From assembly GCA_001179505.1 (NCBI GenBank), contig CDMY01000708.1:1-64000 (forward strand): a DNA stretch of 64,000 nt. The letters are read 5' to 3'. Of this stretch, positions 48,847 through 59,400 are shown piece after piece. The notes under the pieces are model-generated. The model had not been told where the DNA came from. It saw only the letters and a list, made by a program, of their open reading frames with translations, and ran no database searches. The first letter of the stretch is position 1. Each line of letters starts with the position of its first letter. The DNA is from Vitrella brassicaformis CCMP3155. Its lineage: Eukaryota > Protista > Chromerida. The position numbers and the translations under genes were made by a program.

Positions 48847-50322
48847 GGAGGCTGATCGATGCAGCCATCCAGCCTTTTGTAGTCGGTGGGGGGCGCTTGT
48901 GTGTATGCGTGTGTGTGTGTGTATGTGTGTGTGTGTGTGTGTGTGTGTACATGAGCCTTTATGGCTCATAAATACCTACCTGCCTTCTCACTTGGTTGGT
49001 CGGTTGGTGTCCTCCTGGGCACGCAGCCGTCAATGACATCAATGGGGGCGGTGTGCTCTTTTCATCCCTTGATCGATTCATTGATTGAGCGAGGAGTGCT
49101 TCCGTCGTCTGCCTGCCTGCCTACTGTCTCCCTGCCCTTGATCGCTTCCTCCCTATATCTCTCGCAATCTCGTTTCTTCGTTCGTGCCGAATGACGTGTG
49201 CCGCCAATTGTATTAGTTGCCCACTTTTGTGGCCTCCTCCGGTCAGTTTGCTGCCTTGCTGGGGTATCATGTCCTCTGCCGCTACCATGATCGGCAAGGC
49301 CGTCAAACGTCTTTGCCGGTCAGCGTTGCGGCGGGTGGTGCTGATGCACTGGCATGGCACAAGCTGCTGGTGTTGAGAGCAGAGAAGAGAAGACCAGAGA
49401 ACAATTGGCTGTCTGTGGGCTGTGGGTGAGTGGCCGTCTGTTTGGTGGTGTTTTGCACCGTACCGTCCCGTGCTGACCTCTCATCTGATAACGTCTGTCT
49501 GCCTATCGGTCTGTGGGTCCGCTTCTGTGTGTGTGTGAGTGGCTGTCACCCCAGACGTCAGGGGGCCCCTCGTGCAGCAACCAACTGTGTCTTCACCGAA
49601 CACAGCTGGTTTCTTGCAAAGGAGGCCCTGAGGCCTGGGAGGCACCGCAAACACACGCACGGACAGAAAGAATGGCTAGAAAGATGTCTGCCTGCAATGT
49701 CAGCTACACACGCGCACGAATGGATTGATTGGGGAATGGTGGATGTGTTTCTAATCTCTTCGCTGGTGCCTGTGTTTGGTCGAGGAGGCGGACCGGGGGG
49801 GATGTGCGTGAGAGCGTTGGTGGTACGCACTGCCGCTGTGCCGACCAGAGCTCTCAGGCTGTGCGTACCAACCAGAGCTCTCAGCCTCGTCCTCTTCCTC
49901 TGTGTCTGCCCCCAATCGATCACCAGCCTCCAGCGTGGCGACAAGTGACAATGCAAGCGCTGATGGTTGAGGCCTACATGCCTTCGGTGGTGTTTTTTCG
50001 CCACTCTGGGGAAGTGAGTGGCGGTCTCAGCCATCAGCAAACAGTAGGGTAGTTGCGTGCGTCCTGTACGTCCATGCATTCAGGTTTTTTCGACCTGCGT
50101 CTTTGCTTGTGTGTGTACGTAGCTCTATAGCTATCTTCATTCGGCTGGTGACACGAAGCCGCTGAGAGCCTTAGTTTAATGATGGTCAGCCTGTGTTCCA
50201 CGCTTAAGATGATTCATTCATGGAGATCTCCATAAAGAGAATGATGGTGCAGAGCAGCTGCAACAGAGAGGGCTCACAGACCTGACACACAGCCAGAGGA
50301 AAACAGCTGTTGCCTTTGTGCA

Positions 50323-50359
50323 GAGCTAAGCTCGCAAACGGCATCTGCGAGCTTAGCTC
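50323..50359. promoter_or_regulatory. Perfect 14-bp inverted repeat containing two opposed AAGCTCGCA elements, about 105 nt upstream of ATG 50465
   Basis: GAGCTAAGCTCGCA (50323-50336), 9-nt spacer, TGCGAGCTTAGCTC (50346-50359). Confidence 0.65.
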
Positions 50360-50464
50360 AAAGGGAAAGGGAGATCTGTCCTTTCCCCCCGGATGTAGCG
50401 TGCAGGCAAGAGTCTCTGCTCACATGCATCCATTATCACTCATTAACACGACGCATCCCTGAGA

Positions 50465-53400
50465 ATGAAGCTCATCTCTACCCTGCACATACTCCTGCTG
50501 CTGCTGCTCGTTTCCATCCACAATGTCCCAGCCACAGCCTTCCATCTCCCCTCAGCCACCTCGTTCCTTCTCCGTCGGCCCTCTCTGCGGACGTCTGCGC
50601 GTGCCGCCACACAGCGGACGACAAGCGATGAGTCCCATCAATCCACTCAGTCGAATCTCGGCCTGGCTGACAAGTACGAGCGGCCAAAGCCAGCCATCGA
50701 CATCCGCCACTTTGCCGGCTGGAGCAGCGACCCGCCTGAGGTGCCGGTGGACGCGTACAAGCTGCTGGCCTACCTGGACGAGGAGCGGCTGCCGCCATTG
50801 CTCGAGGGCGTGACGGGCGTCAAGGGGTTGGACGTGCGGGTGCTCAATGTGGCGGAGAACCAGCTCAGATCTGCACTGCTTGACGTCACCAGAAGGCGGC
50901 AGAAACAGGTGGGAGTGCATATGCGGACGGAGAGCTGAGGGAGCCACGTCTGGTGTGTGTTGACTGACAGTTTTCGGATGAGGACTCGGTGCAGTGGTTC
51001 TCTTCCCGGCACAACGTGACGAGCCGCGTATTCGGCAAGGTGAGGCGGCGGCTGGCCCAGCGGCACCCTCACGGACACGCCACCAGCCCCCTGGAGGACC
51101 TGGCGTACCCCGCCATGGACTCCATTGAGGACAGCAACAGAGAGGAGGCCTTCAGCATGTACTATGAGTACTTCAGGCAAAGGTGCCTTCTTACTCGTGG
51201 CTGTATGGCATGGTAGTGTCATGTGCATGGATTCGATGGGTGCATCTGTTGTCTGCCTGTCTGCCGTGCAGGTGTTTTTCGGATGGTGCGTCATCGGAGG
51301 ATGAGGCTGGTGAAGAGAGCAACCGGAATGGTGACGGCGGTGGCGATGGTGATGGCCCGTTAGGTCTGCCCCCCGCCTCTCAGCTGAGTGTGGTGTGGGA
51401 CCCCTCCCCCAGTTACCTCCACGAGTGGGAGGTGTCGCGGCGGCTCGAGTACCCCACTCTCAGGCTGCACGCTGGCATCAACGCATCACCACTTTTCGGG
51501 TAGGGAGGACGACACACATGCCCCTTGCTTGATGGATGGATGCATGTGTGGCGGGCGTGTTGTGGTATATACTTCTGTGTGTGGATCAGGTGCACGGTCT
51601 TGAGCGCGATGCTTGAGCTGTTCGCCCTGGTCAACTCCCCCTCTCACGCCTACCACTCCACCCCAATCGTCACCCCTCCCACCGACGCAGAGAGCGAGGG
51701 AGAAGATCTGTCCGATTTATCCGTCGACTTCGATTTCCCCCCACCGCCGCCCTTTCATGAGAGCGAGCTGGACGACACCTCCCGCCCGCGGCCGAACGTG
51801 CACAGCGTCCTCTACAAGCAGAAGGAGCTTGAGTGCTACGAGTTCGTTGAGGGGCCGGAGGGTGACGACGAGGGGCTGGACTTCAACCTGTTCTTCGGAC
51901 AGACGGGCGACTACGGCATGAGCAGCGAGGAGGAGTGGCGGTACGTGGAGAGCACGAAGGACAAGAGCTCCTTTGACCTTTACAACTCGCTGATTGAGAG
52001 CGGTGTGGCGCCTGAACGAGCCATCGAGATATGCACCAACTCTGCCAGGTGGGTCGGTCACCGACACAGCACAGCACAGCACAGCACAGCACACGACGCA
52101 TGTAATGTCCGACCAACAGGCGCCGAGAGTCATCCGCCCTATGGCAGTCCGGCCGGCTGCCGGTTCGCGAGCTCACTGGCCGCATGCTGGGCTACGGTCT
52201 CGAGGAGACGGCCAAGCTGCTCACGGGCGGGGCGCAGCTGCTGCAGAGGCTGGGCAGGCGACAACTCGACTTCACCGAAAACTGCCTCGCCTATGTATGC
52301 AGAGGCCACACACAAATTCTTCAGACACACGGATGGCTGGCTGGCTGGCTGGATGGATGGATGGAGCGTGTCGTTGGTTGTCTTGTCTGTCAGGGGTGTG
52401 AGCAGTACATGGGAGTCTCGCAGCACGAGGCGTTGCGGTACGCCGACGCGGCGCACAGCCAGCAGGCCTCGCTGCTGTACATGCAGTCGCTCATCATCGT
52501 CCACGAGCTGCTCAACCGCATCCGCACCGCCAGGGGCTTCCCGCTGCCGACAAAGTATGACGTGGGCGTGCTGGAGGAGAGCGGCAAACGGGGCTATCGG
52601 CCCGAAAACAAGACGGAGGAAGACATTGTCGACTTTATGCGTATGTTGGCAACACAGAGATGGGGGCAAAGGGGAGGATATCAGGGAGGGGTGTGTGTGT
52701 GTGTGTAGTGGGATTCCCGTCAGAAGGGCTGGACTTGACGAACCGGACGCAGGCGGCCATGTTTCTTTATGAGTTCTTCAACCAGGCTTGCTTCGACGGC
52801 ACCCTGCTCAAGGTGCCCATCGACATAGACGACCACATGCACAGCCTGGGTAGGTAGGACGGACAACAAACGCATCACCCACAACATGTGGGTGTGCTGT
52901 GCATATCTTTGTATGTGCAGGGTATACCCATTACGTGTTGGACCGCCCTCGGCCGCCCCGGATAAGGCTGAGCGGCCGGCTCTTCGCCGACGACAAGTAC
53001 ATCCCCCTCCTCGCCCACACCCTCCTCGAACAGATGCTCACCGTATGGGAGCTCTCCACTGTCCACTTCCTTGACCCACAGGTGCCCTCTCCCCCCCTAC
53101 ACACAGACACGCACACACACGCATCGCTTGTGTGTGTCAGATGGGCATCGGGCAGAGCGCCGTGTCGCTGTTCGAGCCGACTCGGTTCGGCATCAAGCGT
53201 CAGGAGCTGCGCGAGAAGGCCGAGATCAACGACTGGCCGTTCCACTTCGACTGGAGCGCCGATCTCACTTTGCTGATGAACGACACCGAGCTGGCGGCGT
53301 ATGAGAGAGAGGAGGACCAGGACGACGAGGAGACTGCTGACGTGGGCAAGGGATGTGGGGAGGGCGGGAGGTGTGCTGATGGGGTGGGGTGTGTCTGTGC

Positions 53401-53958
53401 TGTGTGTATTGTTTGGTCAGTGGTACCTGAGTCTCATTGCCAAGGGGTTTCCCGCCGACCGTGCGCTTGACATCATCAACGAAGCCGTCAGGTCAGCCCA
53501 CACCCACACCCACGCCCCCAACCGCGCATCCATCCAGCGCACTCTCTCTGTGTGTCATCAATCCATCCATGCATCAGGCGGCACGACCCCCGAGAGGCGT
53601 GGCGATTCCTGCCTGATGCGCAAGAGCAAGAGCAAGAGCAGGAGAAAGACGACGAGGAGGACAGACCCGGAGCCCCCCGTCGGTACCTGAAGCCCTTTCT
53701 CGGCATGACGCTGCCGGTCCGCGAGCTGGCGGCGGCTTTGGTGGCGGAGTGCCCCATCGAGGCTGAGAGGCTCATGTACACGGGTCTGCCGAGCATGCTG
53801 TACTTGGCTGAGGCGTTTGCTGTGGAGCAGGAGGGCCTGGCGGGGAGGGAGCTGTCGGAGGGGGAGCGGTACAATGCCAGCATGAAGATGATCGCCTTCA
53901 TGGAAAACGCATTCAAACAGGTAGGGCTTAGCTCGGTAGGACTGACTGTCGCCATGCA

Positions 53959-53992
<34 letters not shown>

Positions 53993-55570
53993 TGTGTAGG
54001 CGTGTGTGAAGGCATGGTACGACCTGACCATAGAAAGCGCCATCGACGACAAAGAGCTCAAGCGTCAGTTCCTGGAGAACACCTTCATGGTCGAGCAGGT
54101 CTTCGACGACCTCCGGAACATCATGCTCACCACAGCCATCGCCAAAGGGCAGCAACCCCCGTCACACGCCGACACAAACGCGGAGCTCGCTGACCTCGGG
54201 GTGGCCGGCTATGGTGACCAGGATGGCGCTGTCGACCAGAGGAAGAGAGATGCCGCCAGAAAACTGCCGAGGAAGAAGGATTTCGGGCAGCTTGGGGCTG
54301 GGAATCGAGACGCCGTGGTGCGGGGGATGTATGGCGTGTTGAACGAGGTCTTGTTTGACGGTGCGCTGCCGTGGGTGCCCGTCGAGTGGCGACCCGACCT
54401 CAAGGGCCTATCGGACGTCAGGATCCAAGTCGGCAAAACCAACATCAGCTCCATCTGGGTACGAGAACACTGAACACCCCCCGCCACACACACGCACACA
54501 GATGCACCTCTCTCTCTCTCTCTCTCTGCACAGCTGAACCCGGTTGTGGCTGACTACGGTCTGCTGGCGTACCTGCTGATCCGCGAGATGACGCACCTGT
54601 GGAACTACTACCGGCCCTACACCGTGGGCACGGCGATGCACGCCCTCTACGGCGAGCAGTTCGTGCCGGCCTGGCGGCCATTCGGCGACGACACATTCGA
54701 TGAGGACATGAAAAGGCAGCTGAGGGAGATGGGCGTCTCCAACACCACACTGCAGGTACGCGAGCAGGCCACCGAGGCACATGGAGGGATGGATGACACA
54801 CGCCATTCGTGGGTGTGGGTGTGGGTGTGGATGTGGGTGTGGGTGTGTGTGGGTGGGTGTGATGGCATGGTAGGCGTTGGAGCCTGGTTCCGCTGTGGAG
54901 CGTGCCGAGACTCAGTTCGACTGGGACGAGGAGAGGGGGTTCAGCCCGGAGGACCTCATGGCAAAACGCATGGACACCAAACGATGCCAAATCGAGCGGG
55001 TCGGACAGACACTGACAGACAGACAGCACCGACACACCGACACACCGACCGACGCACAGAGACATCCACTGCTGTATGTGTGTGTGTGTGTGTGTCCCTC
55101 ACTCAGGTAGTGCTGGATGAGGAGTCGTGGCAGTTTGTGGCTGAGAGTGACGCATACATGTTCGAGTGCGGCGTCACCAAACCAGAACTCAACAAGTAAG
55201 TAAATGAGCAGCCATCCAGCCATCCACCTTTCCCCCTGTGTGTGTCAGGGTGTCCGAGTACTTGGCCTTGCGGTCCGAGGGTCCCGTCAACATCTACCGC
55301 GACCTCGTCGACTCAGCCGCAGCCTCAAAAACAAGAGCTGCAGAAATCACCGTAACAACCCACACACCCACACCACGACACCTCTCTCTCAATCAATCCT
55401 CTGTTTCCTTCTCAGGCCCAGGCGGTCAGCAAGAAGCGCTCCGGAACCGTCGAGACCCGGCAAGCAGCCGACGACCTCCGCACACAAGGCGGCACACTCC
55501 TCACCACAGACCGCAATCTCGTTGCGGCCAGCGGAGACGCCGAGAAGGCGTCTATCGCACGATTAGGTGA
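50465..55570 (+). CDS. Large plastid-targeted protein with an internal duplication and two degenerate SprT-like domains
   Basis: Leader MKLISTLHILLLLLLVSIHNVPATA-FHLPSATSFLLRRPSLRTSAR; about 16 exons. SprT-like segments LYEFFNQACFDGTL...RIRLSGRL...LAHTLLEQMLT and MYGVLNEVLFDGAL...W|LNP...LAYLLIREMTH. Confidence 0.75.
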
Positions 55571-56424
55571 CACTGCTGGTACTGGTGCTGGTGCTGATAG
55601 TGAGGTTGAAGACTCAGGTTTGGATGAGGATGGTCCCAGCAACAGGGAGGGGCGGCGGCGGGCTGAGCGGGAGAGGGAGAGGGGGAGGGCTAAGGCTAAG
55701 GCGCTGAGGGGGTTCGGGGGGACGGAATAATGAGACGTGAGATGAGATGTGTGTGGCGTGTGAGATGGTGGGTGGATGGATGGATGGATACACACACACA
55801 TACACATACAAGCGCATTCTAGGATCGTCGATCATCGACACACACGCAGAGTCTTTTCCATGTCATGTGCTCTACAAGGGTCACTGTGTGGGTGAGGTGA
55901 CTGTATACCCACAGCACGGCAGAGCACGGCACGGCTGGCTACATCACCAGCCAGCCCGCCGCCCATCCATCCACTCTACAATGCCTACCGTCTCTGAGGT
56001 TACTTACACTTACACAAACAGACAGACAGACAGACGGGCAGACATCGATCGCCCAGAAGCGAGGGCGCGGCGCGCCCGCCGCTCCTTCGTCGTCACCTGC
56101 TGGTACCTGCACACACACATCCACATCAACAGAGACGACAACAGCCATCAATCAGAGAGAGGGGAGGCACAAAACACCATCACACACCACACATAGCACA
56201 GTCCACACCATCAACAGTTAGTTGTGCAGATATGTTAGCGGCTAACACATGCATGGCATGCTGCCGTGCCGGTCTCATGCTACGCACGCCGCAGGTCGCC
56301 CCCTCCCTCCCCCTCATCGGTTGCCCCCCAATTGCCGTGTGTGGTGTGAGTGCTGTGCCGTTCGGTCGTTCGTTCGTTCTACAGGCGTCTTCCGGTTGTT
56401 CCATCACACACAGACACCACACCA

Positions 56425-59400
56425 TCAACAACGACACGCCCGGTCGGTGGTCTGTTGACCTTGTTGGCTGTCAGATGACGCCGACGGCGCCAAAGCATGC
56501 CGCTGGCCGGGCGGGCTCGACGACGGCTGCACCACACGCCCCATGGTGGCCATGGGTATAACAGGGGGGAATGGAATGGTCGACATCGGCTGCCATGGCA
56601 CGTGGGACGGCACGGGGTCCGCAAAGGGGTGTGGCCGGGTCGGGGGATGCACCCATGGCAGGTGCAGGTGCAGCTGTGGCTGGGGCTGCGGCTGTGGCTG
56701 TGGCGGCACTGTTGGCACGTAATCCACCACCATCATGCTGCTGCTGGTGCTGCTGGTGGTGTCCCCCCAAGCGGACCCCCCATGTGGCAATGGTGTGGGT
56801 GTGGAGGTGGAAGGGGTGGGTGCGGATGATGATGTGGATGTGTCAGGGGGTGGGTGGGGGCCGCCCAGGCACGGTACGGCCAGGGGTGTGCAGTACTCAC
56901 CGTTGGACAGGTGTGGGGGGCTGCCGTGGTCGGCGGTGCCGTTGGCCTGCTGCAGCCCTCGGGATGATGCCGATGCGGCCGCAGCGCCACTGCTGCCGTT
57001 GAGGAGGTCCATGGCTGCAGGGGGGAGGGGCTTTAGACCGAGAGTCGCCTCGATCGTCGCTGCATACATTCACACCACACATGAGGGATCGATTGTTATT
57101 TCCTCGTGTGTCGTTTCGTGTTGGCTGTGCTGGCTGACGCTTGGTGCTCCAGACTCTGAGGGTCTGGTCGTCCGACGCCGTCAACATCCTGAAACCACAC
57201 ACAAAGCCGCAACAACACGCCCATTCTCACTCTCTCGCTCTGTCTCTCTGCGTGTGTGTCCACCGAACCAACCAAGGGCTGTTGGGTGGCCAGGCAATAC
57301 AGTTGACGGTGGCAGCGTGTCCCTGCAGGACCTCCAGCAGCGAGCCGAAGTGTCGGTGCCAGATGTACACCTGGGTGTCCTCCGACCCGCTGATGACGTA
57401 CGTCTCCTGCGGACCGCCGAAACACGACCTCACCACAAACCGCCCCTGATAGTGGCCACGATACCGCTAAACACACACACGCACAGAGAAAGAAAGAGAG
57501 AGAGAGAGAGAATGAATAAATGAATTCCATCCACTGTGGTGCCCCACACCCACCCCACAGGCACACGATAGTAGGCACCTGGACAATTCTCCTTTCTGTG
57601 AGGTCCCAGAGGCGAATGACTGGCGTCTGGTGGGAGATGTTGACCAGCACCTGGTCAGCTATCGACGAGACCGTCACGGACGTCACGGGATCCGACTCGG
57701 GCAGACTAAATGGATGGCCACACACACACACACACACACGCGGATGGATGGATGGATGGCTGGATGAGTCCCACCCACATCAGCTACACCTGAAGAGTTC
57801 CCTCTTGGAGTGCAGGTCGATGACTTTGATGCTCTTCTCCGACGTCACCACGAGCATCTTCTTGCCGTCGCCTGACGGACGGAAGAAAGCATTGCATGGA
57901 CAGACACAATGAATGAATGGCAAATGAATGCACCACTCGTGCGTGACGTGGCACGATGTGCCTGCCTACTTGTGACGGCTACGTCCTGGATGCGCGATGA
58001 GAACATCCACTGCTGCTCCTGACCAATCGGTGGATGGATGGATGGATGGATCAGCACACACACACCGATGCGTGTCGGCTGGTTGCTCTGCCCACTCACT
58101 TCGGTGGGGTCATTGAGGTTCCACATGTAGATGCACTTGTCGATGCCGGCAGACACGAACCGCTCGTTGTCTTGCAGCCAACACACGCTCGCCACAGACT
58201 CTGTCGGACACACGCATCGCATCCACACAACCATCCGGACCTCACACACACACACACACACACACGGGCTTGCGGGCTCATGTCATGTATGGCTTCACCT
58301 GTGTGTTTGGTGATGACCCTGACGCACTTGGCAGTGTCGGAGGCCCACACCCTGACGGTCTTGTCGTTTGACGCGGTGGCGATGTGCGCGTCGTCGGGGG
58401 ACCAGGCTATGAAGCTGCTGGCGTCGCTGTGGCCGATAAGGTGCTGAACCTGATCGCATCGACAGGCACATGGATCACACGACACAGACAGCACAGCACA
58501 GCACAGGACGGCGCACAGTGGGTGTGTCGTTCTGTGTCTTTGGGTGTGGGTGCATCCCGCCAGACCTTTGTGAATGCGGTGCCCTGGCATTCCCAGATGA
58601 TGACGGTCTTGTCCTTGGACGACGACGCTGATGAAATCACACACACACACACACACACAGACACTCAGATACATTGATGGGTCCCTCCTCCGCCCACCAA
58701 TGTATCGGCCGTTGTGAGAGATGGCGACGAACCACACCTGCACACACACACACACACACACAGACATGCATCAGACACACTACGCTCGCCGGTATTGTTA
58801 GGGCATGTGTGTGTGATGTGTGACCTCGTCTGTGTGTTCGTCCAGCGTGGCCACACAGTGGGTGGGCAAAGTGCCCTGCGGACAGGTGTGGTCCTGACAC
58901 AGAGTCAATCAAGGCCACACCACCAACCAAATGAATGAATGGATCAGGTGTCTGTCTGTCTGCCTGTCTGTCTGCCTGTGTGCCTGTCTGGCTGGCTGGC
59001 TAGCTTACCTGCAGTAGGCTGAAAGAGCTGGTGTTCCTGTTGTGGTACACACAGTGCATCTGGCAACACAACCAACGCACACCACACACACAAATGCAGC
59101 TGCACACACAATCCCAAGCCCAAGCCGGAGCCCAAGCCCGAGCCCCACCTCTTGCAGCTTCCACGCTTGATGGAGCAGCACCTGACCAACACACACCACA
59201 CCCCCACACCATGAGCAGGATCGTCTGCCCTTCCTTGTCCTGCTCTGTCCTACGGCGAGCCTCCTCGGCGGAACGACCACTTCGGGCGGGATGAGGTCCA
59301 CCATCCGCTGCCACAGCAGCTCACGAGAACCCTACAGCAGCCACACAACACACACGACAGACACACACACGATGATAGCGCGCACCATTTCTGCCCATGC

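What the first reader, a model, noticed from the sequence alone, without database searches (positions are those of the whole stretch)
50465..55570. Plastid-targeted protein made of a duplicated module ending in catalytically dead SprT-like domains
Two halves align by eye: YNSLIESGVAPERAIEI / YLSLIAKGFPADRALDI (about 51980 / 53423); LPVRELTGRML / LPVRELAAALV (about 52155 / 53711); then SprT/Spartan-like cores, LYEFFNQACFDGTL...RIRLS..L...LAHTLL-EQMLT (53028-53042) and MYGVLNEVLFDGAL...WLN...LAYLLI-REMTH (54582-54596). The SprT consensus (YxxxNxxxFxxxL...IxLS...LxxTLxHEMxH) needs HExxH for Zn catalysis (established). Here it is EQxxT and RExxH, so both domains look like pseudoproteases. Active SprT proteins are DNA-dependent proteases for DNA-protein crosslinks. 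A bipartite-leader (ATA-F) tandem pseudo-SprT suggests a repurposed nucleoid-, RNA- or protein-binding scaffold in the plastid, which I know of no description for (inference).
Basis: partly seen in the sequence, partly recalled or inferred. Interest (0 to 1): 0.75.

Follow-up and report, generated by a model that had tools for sequence, protein, structure and literature searches.

The report
Triple dead SprT-like plastid protein
An expressed 17-exon gene of the alga Vitrella brassicaformis encodes a 1331-residue, probably plastid-targeted protein that carries three (not two) very diverged copies of a SprT/Spartan-type metalloprotease fold, all lacking the zinc site, so it is a new pseudo-protease family whose role is unknown.

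Summary
The motifs sit at the stated coordinates. Spliced transcript contigs show one gene of 17 exons (50465-55730), and its product equals database protein P0001 (CEM30941.1, Vitrella brassicaformis, 1331 aa). The two halves are homologous (Smith-Waterman z 10.3) and share two intron positions and phases. I also found a third degenerate core near the N-terminus (aa 196-310) and a single-module paralogue elsewhere in the genome (P0003).

Pfam, NCBIfam and PHROGs do not recognise any SprT domain. Three other lines do:
- A profile of the four Vitrella cores ranks human Spartan first and second in the PDB.
- An AlphaFold model of core B, built from Vitrella rows only (pLDDT 73.6), has Spartan as top hit by Foldseek and by an unbiased VIA-align search (Z 8.0).
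- All 30 nearest ESM Atlas models are SprT-like.

The zinc site reads RExxH(+15 H) in B, EQxxT in A, SAMLE in core 0 and REMLN in P0003.

The leader fits a chromerid bipartite plastid signal (ATA|F). The nucleoid/RNA-binding idea is not supported, because the mature protein is very acidic and has no zinc-binding or basic DNA-binding appendage. No relatives were found outside Vitrella.

The parts
50465..55730 (+). Coding region of one gene, 17 exons: 50465-50908, 50971-51182, 51272-51499, 51590-52048, 52120-52294, 52394-52640, 52709-52849, 52921-53081, 53141-53341, 53421-53491, 53578-53920, 54000-54458, 54534-54755, 54874-54999, 55107-55195, 55249-55351, 55416-55730 (stop 55728-55730). Product is 1331 aa = P0001 (CEM30941.1 / A0A0G4GLE1).
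   Evidence: Spliced contigs of runs X6 and X7 (4475 and 3989 nt) span the locus; all introns are GT..AG. The model is identical to P0001.
50465..50539 (+). Signal-peptide-like segment, aa 1-25 (hydrophobic run HILLLLLLVSI, then ATA before a likely cleavage site).
   Evidence: Read directly from the sequence. First in-frame ATG after a stop. Transcript contigs start at 50363. No predictor was available.
50540..50644 (+). Phe at +1, followed by a transit-peptide-like stretch (aa 26-60).
   Evidence: In aa 24-63 there are 15 S/T, 5 R/K and 2 D/E. Chromerid plastid proteins carry a signal peptide plus transit peptide with Phe after the cleavage site (PMC6668581).
51112..51635 (+). Core 0, aa 196-310: a third, most decayed SprT-like core, crossing two introns. 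It has NREEAFSMYYEYFRQRCFSDG, an acidic insert, then LRLHAGINASPLFGCTVLSAMLELF. The HExxH position reads SAMLE (51603-51617).
   Evidence: Core 0 against core A gives z 7.5, 0 of 1000 shuffles; against the P0003 core, z 3.4. Alignment A4. The four-core profile hits both exons in the genome scan (but core 0 is one of the rows the profile was built from, so this match is by construction).
51903..53341 (+). Module A, aa 400-756: start motif YNSLIESGVAPERAIEI (51981-52031), LPVREL (52157-52174), helical part, core A, FDW (53246-53254), acidic linker.
   Evidence: Colinear alignment with module B and P0003; z 10.3.
52732..53143 (+). Core A, aa 597-690: SprT-like core with EQMLT (53028-53042) in place of HExxH. 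Both His are gone and Glu is replaced by Gln.
   Evidence: Core A against core B z 7.9; against the P0003 core z 10.8. Alignment A4. The E112Q change inactivates Spartan (PMC7534798).
53421..55112 (+). Module B, aa 757-1165: start motif YLSLIAKGFPADRALDI (53424-53474), acidic insert, LPVREL (53711-53728), helical part, core B, FDW (54916-54924).
   Evidence: Intron positions and phases shared with module A.
54306..54692 (+). Core B, aa 997-1100: best-preserved SprT-like zincin core. REMTH at 54582-54596 (Arg1064 codon CGC); His1083 at 54639-54641, 15 residues after His1068.
   Evidence: AF2 model with pLDDT 73.6 and order helix, three strands, helix. Spartan 6mdx/6mdw are top by Foldseek (E 0.034, prob 0.99) and by VIA-align (Z 8.0). 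All 30 nearest Atlas models are PF10263. Language-model features point to SprT-like. Codons.
55119..55348 (+). Possible start of a further, truncated module, aa 1168-1226 (EESWQFVAES ... IYRDLVDSAAASKTRAAEI).
   Evidence: Weak: z 3.5, 5 of 500 shuffles, against the start of module A.
55416..55730 (+). Low-complexity C-terminal tail, aa 1228-1331, and the stop codon.

Best explanation
Shown: the locus is a single expressed Vitrella brassicaformis gene. Its product has an N-terminal signal peptide, then Phe and a transit-peptide-like stretch, followed by three tandem modules. Each module ends in a highly diverged SprT/Spartan-type zincin domain (helix, three-stranded sheet, 'active-site' helix). 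The modules arose by tandem duplication of genomic DNA, introns included. A single-module paralogue, P0003, lies on another contig.

Shown: none of the four cores has a complete HExxH...H zinc site. Core B and P0003 share Arg at the first His. Core A has the classic inactivating Glu-to-Gln change. Core 0 has nothing left.

Inferred: the protein is imported into the plastid stroma through the ER/bipartite route. There it acts without classical zinc proteolysis, most likely as a multivalent peptide- or protein-binding scaffold or regulator. It would use the retained zincin cleft (edge strand plus helix), as other pseudo-metallopeptidases do, for example the chloroplast FtsHi proteins.

Inferred: a DNA/RNA-binding role is unlikely, because the protein is strongly acidic and lacks the zinc-binding and basic appendages through which Spartan binds DNA.
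For: - Gene and expression.
- Duplication.
- Paralogue: (E 3.2e-5 genome-wide).
- SprT-like by profile: the four-core profile ranks Spartan 6mdw/6mdx first and second of 177,635 PDB sequences, colinear over profile positions 17-90, with llREMle aligned on LLHEMIH. The three-module profile also lists Spartan.
- SprT-like by enrichment: the four-core HMM puts six zincins at the top of 878 bacterial ORFs.
- Related zincins: BLASTP of core B against YgjP-like zincins gives E 7e-5 to 1e-3.
- SprT-like by structure: AF2 model from Vitrella rows only, pLDDT 73.6. Foldseek top two are Spartan. VIA-align Z 8.0, rank 1 of 48,161 chains, with nearly all of the top 50 being zincin peptidases. All 30 nearest Atlas models are PF10263, TM 0.58/0.64, rmsd 2.5 A over 84 residues.
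- SprT-like by language-model features: core B and P0003.
- Lost zinc site, acidity, no Cys/His cluster.
- Leader: and PMC6668581.
- Precedent: plastid pseudo-metallopeptidases, including FtsHi4 with REAAV (PMC11266112).
Against: - No curated profile sees the domain. Pfam, NCBIfam and PHROGs are blank at E up to 10, on single exons and on the whole protein, and the six-frame scans with PF10263 and PF01863 miss the locus.
- Each supporting score is weak on its own: PDB profile E about 0.8, Foldseek E 0.03, VIA Z 8 (the tool warns this is a middling value), hhalign P 0.004-0.07.
- Only core B was modelled with confidence. Cores A and 0 are SprT-like only through their homology to B and P0003.
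- The whole-module model was poor (pLDDT 41.8), so the helical parts are unexplained.
- Core B keeps Glu and two His, so residual or altered catalysis is not excluded.
- Localisation and binding function are untested.
- There are no orthologues, so selection on the family could not be measured.
Confidence: 0.6

Rival explanations
1. Core B is still a hydrolase. Glu1065, His1068 and His1083 (at the Spartan-like +15 spacing) would hold a metal or an activated water, with Arg1064 taking a new role such as oxyanion or phosphate binding. The protein would then be an unusual active enzyme with two dead sister domains, as carboxypeptidase D has active and inactive tandem domains.
For: REMTH followed by His at +15. 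Arg-Glu-Met is shared by core B and P0003, so the change is old and kept. YgjP-like relatives, which give the best pairwise BLAST hits, are annotated as nucleotide hydrolases (own knowledge). Carboxypeptidase D is a precedent for mixed tandem domains (PMC11266112).
Against: Arg cannot bind zinc, and zincins need three protein ligands. P0003 has also lost the second His (REMLN). His1083 lies in the low-confidence part of the model (residues 92-99 have pLDDT under 50). No activity data exist.
Confidence: 0.12
2. One reading: a nucleoid-, DNA- or RNA-binding scaffold in the plastid, derived from a DNA-dependent protease.
For: The nearest known fold is Spartan, a DNA-dependent protease. The C-terminal tail has a short Arg/Lys-rich stretch (RRRAERERERGRAKAK).
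Against: The mature protein has 218 D+E against 143 K+R. There are 0-2 Cys after each core, so no zinc ribbon or zinc-binding domain. Spartan binds DNA through its zinc-binding domain and basic region, not through the protease core (PMC7534798). The tail as a whole is neutral (19 K+R, 19 D+E).
Confidence: 0.07
3. The domain belongs to the YgjP-like (DUF45, PF01863) branch of the zincin clan rather than to SprT-like.
For: The best pairwise BLASTP hits of core B are YgjP-like ORFs: L116 at 6.8e-5, L112 at 9.6e-5, then L135, L117 and L137. Smith-Waterman z is 8.5-9.2, with shared IWLN...L.Y.L.(H/R)E..HL...F.P.WR.
Against: The WGSC motif of that family is absent. The N-terminal helix motif Y/F-x3-N-x3-F-D/G-G-x-L is SprT-type and aligns with Spartan and with SprT-like L108. 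All 30 nearest Atlas models are PF10263. A YgjP HMM scores core B at only 2.2 bits. The PF01863 six-frame scan misses the locus. Both families sit in the same clan, so the difference is one of branch only.
Confidence: 0.12
4. The protein is not plastidial. The N-terminus is only an ER signal peptide or anchor, and the protein is secreted, stays in the endomembrane system, or stops in the periplastidial compartment.
For: No predictor was run and there is no localisation data. Phe at +1 is less conserved in Vitrella than in Chromera (PMC6668581). The paralogue P0003 has a signal peptide without Phe (AQSA|GQP).
Against: ATA|F followed by a stretch of 40 residues with 15 S/T and only 2 acidic residues is the expected pattern for a stromal protein in red-lineage complex plastids.
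Confidence: 0.2
5. The SprT likeness is chance or convergence, and the repeats are a lineage-specific fold of their own.
For: All curated HMM libraries are blank. The individual E-values and Z-scores are marginal.
Against: Independent methods all single out the same, pre-stated family: rank 1-2 of 177,635 PDB sequences, rank 1 of 48,161 structures, all 30 of the nearest Atlas models, and the top six of 878 ORFs. The register places R/E-E/Q-M on H-E-M every time.
Confidence: 0.05

Closest known systems
SprT-like domain of Spartan/SPRTN (Pfam PF10263; PDB 6mdx, 6mdw), with Wss1 and GCNA as kin
   Same: Same core fold order: helix, three strands, active-site helix. Same N-terminal helix motif (aromatic-x3-N-x3-F-x-G-x-L), same 'I-x-L-N/S' strand and the 'LL-x-E-M-x-H' helix in the same register. 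His at +15 in core B. Top structural and PDB-profile hit.
   Different: Below every curated profile threshold. The first zinc His is replaced (Arg in B and P0003, Glu in A). The catalytic Glu is lost in A and in core 0. There is no zinc-binding domain, zinc ribbon or basic DNA-binding region. Three copies sit in one chain, each preceded by an unexplained helical region of about 170-230 residues. The protein is predicted to be plastidial, not nuclear.
YgjP-like / DUF45 zincins (Pfam PF01863) of bacteria
   Same: Best pairwise sequence similarity to core B, about 30 bits and 29-32% identity over 70-80 residues, covering the last strand, the active-site helix and the downstream F-x-P-x-W-R.
   Different: No WGSC motif, no profile match, and a different N-terminal half. 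The bacterial proteins have an intact HExxH.
Chloroplast pseudo-metallopeptidases FtsHi1-5 (M41) and EGY3 (S2P-like)
   Same: Plastid proteins that keep a metallopeptidase fold without the zinc site. FtsHi4 reads REAAV, with Arg at the first His as in core B and P0003 (PMC11266112; PMC9355673, listed).
   Different: Unrelated families and architectures (AAA+ or membrane proteins). They are conserved across plants, whereas this family was found only in Vitrella. This is a functional analogy, not homology.
Carboxypeptidase D (three tandem M14 domains, the third inactive)
   Same: A signal peptide followed by three tandem metallopeptidase-fold domains that have lost active-site residues to different degrees (PMC11266112).
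   Different: A different fold family. Two of its domains are active. It is a membrane-anchored animal protein.

Membership tests
SprT-like (Pfam PF10263) | Match to the family profile at or above its gathering score | tested here: not met
   No PF10263 hit at E up to 10 on single exons, on domain pieces or on whole P0001 and P0003. The six-frame genome scan finds three other loci but not this one. NCBIfam SprT models and PHROGs are blank, while E. coli SprT as a control scores 288 bits.
SprT-like (Pfam PF10263) | Zincin metalloprotease-subdomain fold closest to solved or predicted SprT domains | tested here: met
   Core B only. AF2 pLDDT 73.6 from a four-row Vitrella-only alignment. Foldseek top two are Spartan, prob 0.99 and 0.97. 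VIA-align Z 8.0, rank 1 of 48,161. All 30 nearest Atlas models are PF10263, TM 0.58/0.64.
SprT-like (Pfam PF10263) | Family sequence motifs in order: N-terminal helix (aromatic-x3-N-x3-F-x-G-x-L), I-x-L-N/S strand, L-L-H-E-M-x-H helix | tested here: met
   Colinear alignment of the four-core profile with Spartan (positions 17-90 to chain residues 26-102) and with bacterial SprT-like L108 (15-87). The only exceptions are the catalytic residues.
SprT-like (Pfam PF10263) | HExxH plus a third His that bind zinc, with Glu as general base | tested here: not met
   Core B has REMTH plus His1083. Core A has EQMLT. Core 0 has SAMLE. P0003 has REMLN. RNA contigs show no differing letter at these sites.
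SprT-like (Pfam PF10263) | DNA-binding appendage (zinc-binding domain, zinc ribbon or basic region), as in Spartan and bacterial SprT | tested here: not met
   There are 0-2 Cys and 0-4 His in the 66-100 residues after each core. The mature protein has a net charge of about -75.
YgjP-like (Pfam PF01863) | Match to the family profile; WGSC motif before the I-x-L-N strand | tested here: not met
   No Pfam hit. The six-frame scan misses the locus. My own YgjP HMM scores 2.2 bits. The motif position reads VGKTN. Only pairwise BLASTP is positive.
Bipartite plastid-targeting signal of chromerids | N-terminal signal peptide followed by Phe at +1 and an S/T-rich, acid-poor transit peptide | tested here: inconclusive
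   The sequence fits by inspection: hydrophobic core, ATA|F, then 15 S/T and 2 D/E in 40 residues, matching the description in PMC6668581. SignalP, ASAFind and HECTAR were not available.
Bipartite plastid-targeting signal of chromerids | Demonstrated plastid localisation | not testable with these tools
   Needs tagging, immunolocalisation or organelle proteomics.
Pseudo-enzyme (pseudo-metallopeptidase) | Enzyme fold kept, catalytic residues lost, gene expressed and intact | tested here: met
   Fold. Residues. Fully spliced transcript with an open 1331-codon frame. Lack of activity itself was not tested.

The most novel reading that the evidence does not exclude
A Vitrella-specific family of SprT-derived pseudo-zincins in which Arg has replaced the first zinc His. 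Its three-domain member would work inside the plastid as a multivalent client- or peptide-binding adaptor in protein import or quality control, as the FtsHi pseudo-proteases do. Alternatively, core B would use its Arg-Glu...His...His site for a new, non-zincin chemistry.
Probability: 0.15. Interest if true: 0.7.

Novelty: new variant of a known kind. Interest (0 to 1): 0.5.

Why it matters
SprT, Spartan and Wss1 are known as active proteases that repair DNA-protein crosslinks. A recent review of inactive metallopeptidases does not mention any SprT-type pseudo-protease (PMC11266112), and I found no paper on a plastid SprT-like protein.

This locus shows the fold re-used without its zinc site, triplicated, and apparently sent to a complex plastid in the closest photosynthetic relatives of apicomplexan parasites. 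It adds a case to the list of plastid pseudo-proteases. It is also a worked example of a domain that curated profile libraries miss and that paralogue-based profiles plus structure prediction recover.

Its weight is limited. The family was found in one species only, and the function is unknown.

Tried and rejected
- Curated libraries. Pfam on 14 exon pieces, on whole P0001 and on its domain pieces gave no relevant family. PHROGs and NCBIfam gave none either.
- Genome scans. Six-frame scans of the genome with PF10263 and PF01863 hit other loci only.
- PDB by sequence. Single cores found nothing.
- Relatives elsewhere. The exhaustive phmmer search with exon 12 found only P0001 itself plus a spurious repeat protein, P0002. 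Word searches with region 400-1200 and with the three-module profile found only the two Vitrella proteins. The metagenome scan with the profile gave 212 pattern hits, none confirmed.
- Phages. A tblastn against phages gave a chance hit that turned out to be a YfcE-like phosphoesterase.
- Whole-module fold. AF2 of module B from a two-row alignment gave pLDDT 41.8, and its Foldseek list was meaningless.
- Bacterial profiles. hhalign of the cores against bacterial SprT and YgjP alignments gave only the strand-plus-helix segment, P 0.004-0.07. An E. coli-type SprT HMM scored no better than shuffles.
- More copies. The N-terminal 56-200 region against the module N-parts was not significant. A marginal extra genome hit on contig C189 is not a credible protein.

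Full report
**Source and gene model**

The window is contig C708 of a 72.7-Mb, 1064-contig genome. The protein found below is recorded as Vitrella brassicaformis CCMP3155.

On the + strand the locus is broken into many short open frames. Contigs of public runs were laid on 50300-55700. Two runs, X6 and X7, hold long spliced contigs of 4475 and 3989 nt that cover the whole locus. Twelve GT..AG junctions were listed directly. The remaining four I placed from the contig lengths and the GT..AG sites.

The result is 17 exons, from 50465 to 55730, with one open frame of 1331 codons.

The joined sequence was built only inside scripts, for local self-comparison. It was never typed into a search tool, so that joined-search step was left out. 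It was not needed, because the exhaustive phmmer search with exon 12 returned a database protein, P0001. P0001 has 1331 aa and is letter-for-letter identical to my model. Its accessions are CEM30941.1 and UniProt A0A0G4GLE1, 'unnamed protein product'. All later work used P0001 by id.

Its end (55570) is a stop in another frame of the last exon; the real stop is at 55728-55730. The cDNA test that could have split the locus does not split it.

**The observation**

All quoted motifs lie at the stated coordinates. The two halves are homologous:
- BLASTP of aa 1-756 against 757-1331 gives one colinear alignment of 322 columns, E 3e-5.
- Smith-Waterman of 401-756 against 757-1200 gives z 10.3. The N-parts alone give z 7.9 and the cores alone z 7.1, and no shuffle reached the observed score.
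- Introns 4 and 10 fall in the same alignment column with phase 2. Introns 5 and 11 fall in the same column with phase 0. The duplication therefore copied genomic DNA with its introns.

Searching the genome with P0001 gave one extra match on contig C365 (E 3.2e-5, aa 993-1079). It belongs to P0003, a 386-aa Vitrella protein. P0003 has a signal peptide, LPLREF, a helical part and a core reading REMLN.

The N-terminal region of P0001 holds a third, decayed core at aa 196-310. It has NREEAFSMYYEYFRQRCFSDG, an acidic insert, and then LRLHAGINASPLFGCTVLSAMLELF.

Pairwise z-scores between the cores:

| Pair | z |
|---|---|
| core 0 vs core A | 7.5 |
| core A vs core B | 7.9 |
| core A vs P0003 core | 10.8 |
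| core B vs P0003 core | 19.1 |

The tail (aa 1168-1226) weakly resembles a module start (z 3.5). A profile of the four cores finds no further credible member in the genome.

**Is the core SprT-like? Evidence against**

- Pfam, NCBIfam and PHROGs give nothing at E up to 10.
- Six-frame scans with PF10263 and PF01863 hit other Vitrella loci but not this one.
- Single-sequence PDB searches are blank.

**Is the core SprT-like? Evidence for**

1. Language-model features of aa 985-1170 gave 30 of 30 hits in SprT-like clusters, with a top score of 0.90. For P0003, 24 of 30 feature hits and all listed structure neighbours carry PF10263.
2. An HMM of the four Vitrella cores (alignment A4) searched against 177,635 distinct PDB sequences returned four hits. 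The top two are the human Spartan SprT domain (6mdw, 6mdx; E 0.8-0.9). They are colinear over profile positions 17-90, with llREMle lying on LLHEMIH. The three-module profile also lists Spartan.
3. The same HMM, run against 878 ORFs from bacterial loci that I fetched with PF10263 and PF01863, put six zincins in the top six places. Only 60 of the 878 ORFs are zincins. The best is a SprT-like ORF aligned over the whole core.
4. BLASTP of core B against the same zincin set gave E 7e-5 to 1e-3 for five YgjP-like members.
5. AlphaFold2 of core B, from an alignment holding only the four Vitrella cores, gave pLDDT 73.6 and pTM 0.65. Residues 1-90 score 74-94, and the order is helix, three strands, long helix.
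   - Foldseek ranks Spartan 6mdx and 6mdw first and second (E 0.034 and 0.09; prob 0.99 and 0.97). Other zincins follow: MATCAP, selecase, abylysin, TTHA0227, IrrE.
   - VIA-align gives Z 8.0 for Spartan (87 residues aligned), level with selecase at Z 8.1.
   - An unbiased VIA-align search of 48,161 chains puts Spartan first, and almost every one of the top 50 is a zincin peptidase, Wss1 and ArdC among them.
   - In the ESM Atlas, all 30 nearest models belong to one family set, PF10263 (TM 0.58/0.64, rmsd 2.5 A over 84 residues).

Each score is marginal alone. The methods are partly independent, though, and all pick the family that was named beforehand, always in the same register. I take core B as a true but very diverged SprT-like zincin domain. 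Cores A and 0 and the P0003 core follow by homology to it. It is not a member by Pfam's own threshold.

The pairwise similarity to YgjP-like proteins shows closeness to that sister family in the same clan. The N-terminal helix motif and the structural neighbours favour SprT-like.

**The catalytic site**

Aligned on H-E-x-x-H:

| Core | Reads | Notes |
|---|---|---|
| B | R-E-M-T-H | Arg1064 codon is CGC, one transition from His; a further His at +15 (His1083), the spacing of the third zinc ligand in Spartan (own knowledge) |
| P0003 | R-E-M-L-N | second His also lost |
| A | E-Q-M-L-T | both His lost; Glu replaced by Gln |
| 0 | S-A-M-L-E | nothing left |

RNA contigs show no differing letters, so these are not editing sites or errors. 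Glu-to-Gln at this position is the standard inactivating mutation of Spartan (PMC7534798). The Arg shared by B and P0003 suggests that the zinc site was already lost before these two copies separated (inference). Core B is therefore 'two-thirds' intact, and residual or altered chemistry cannot be excluded.

**Targeting**

The first 25 residues form a hydrophobic signal-peptide-like segment ending in ATA. Phe follows. The next 40 residues hold 15 S/T, 5 R/K and only 2 acidic residues. Chromerid plastid proteins use such a bipartite signal with Phe after the cleavage site, although Phe is less conserved in Vitrella (PMC6668581). This is a prediction by inspection, since no predictor was available. 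P0003 has a signal peptide without Phe (AQSA|GQP) and may go elsewhere.

**Function**

The mature protein is very acidic (218 D+E, 143 K+R). No Cys/His cluster or basic region follows any core. Spartan binds DNA through such appendages.

The best-supported reading is a non-catalytic, multivalent zincin-fold protein that binds peptides or proteins. This follows what is known of pseudo-metallopeptidases in general. It also has plastid precedents in FtsHi1-5, where FtsHi4 reads REAAV, and in EGY3 (PMC11266112; PMC9355673). This step is inference.

The helical 170-230-residue part before each core, with its invariant LP(V/L)RE(L/F), could not be modelled (pLDDT 41.8) and matches nothing known.

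**Range and novelty**

No relative outside Vitrella was found by any of these:
- the exhaustive search with exon 12;
- two word searches;
- a metagenome scan.

These searches are not very sensitive for so diverged a family. The exon-12 search did not even list P0003. The right wording is therefore 'not found', not 'absent'.

No paper mentions the protein or a plastid or inactive SprT-like protein.

I rate the locus a new variant of a known kind: the known fold and family, with the zinc site lost, a new tandem architecture and a new predicted compartment.

Noticed in passing
G000:C365:44730-45119 (-), locus L161:3449-4600 (-); protein P0003: A single-module paralogue of the window protein (386 aa). 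It has a signal peptide without Phe at +1, LPLREF, a helical part and a pseudo-zincin core reading REMLN. It is almost intron-free, unlike the window gene, and its database sources include a transcriptome collection (MMETSP).
   Followed up: partly
G000:C340:107081-107530 (+), C334:17102-17254 (+), C288:125909-126058 (-); loci L001-L004: The genome has three ordinary SprT-like (PF10263) loci above the Pfam cut-off. At least one has an intact HExxH-type helix (LLHECCHVAQ in L002). The organism therefore keeps canonical SprT proteases beside the dead family.
   Followed up: no
window 50909-55415 (introns): Introns are short (53-118 nt). Many carry GT/CA dinucleotide runs next to the splice sites, which read as THTHTH or CVCVCV in the wrong frames. 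The read tool skipped several of these as repeats, which hid four junctions.
   Followed up: partly
window 53517->55665 and 55665-55669: One X7 contig shows a non-canonical joint (CC..CT, 21-letter side) that skips 2147 nt. Several contigs have loose ends at 55665/55669, inside the GA-rich low-complexity part of the last exon. These are probably assembly artefacts at a repeat.
   Followed up: no
window 56425-57069 (-): A 214-aa open frame on the minus strand, rich in Pro, Ser and Thr, lies just downstream of the gene's 3' UTR. It may be a neighbouring gene.
   Followed up: no
P0002 (database protein, not in the window): The only other hit of the exhaustive exon-12 search is a 902-aa protein made of about eight near-identical repeats (KAQEAYYSKKEGGVSPLRRDAFRRSPVKARLG...). 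The match is to a basic low-complexity stretch and looks spurious.
   Followed up: no
ESM Atlas neighbours of P0003: The nearest feature clusters of P0003 are Ascomycota 'hypothetical proteins' of 280-430 aa, of which only 11-12% of members carry PF10263. This may be another very diverged, possibly inactive, SprT-like family in fungi.
   Followed up: no
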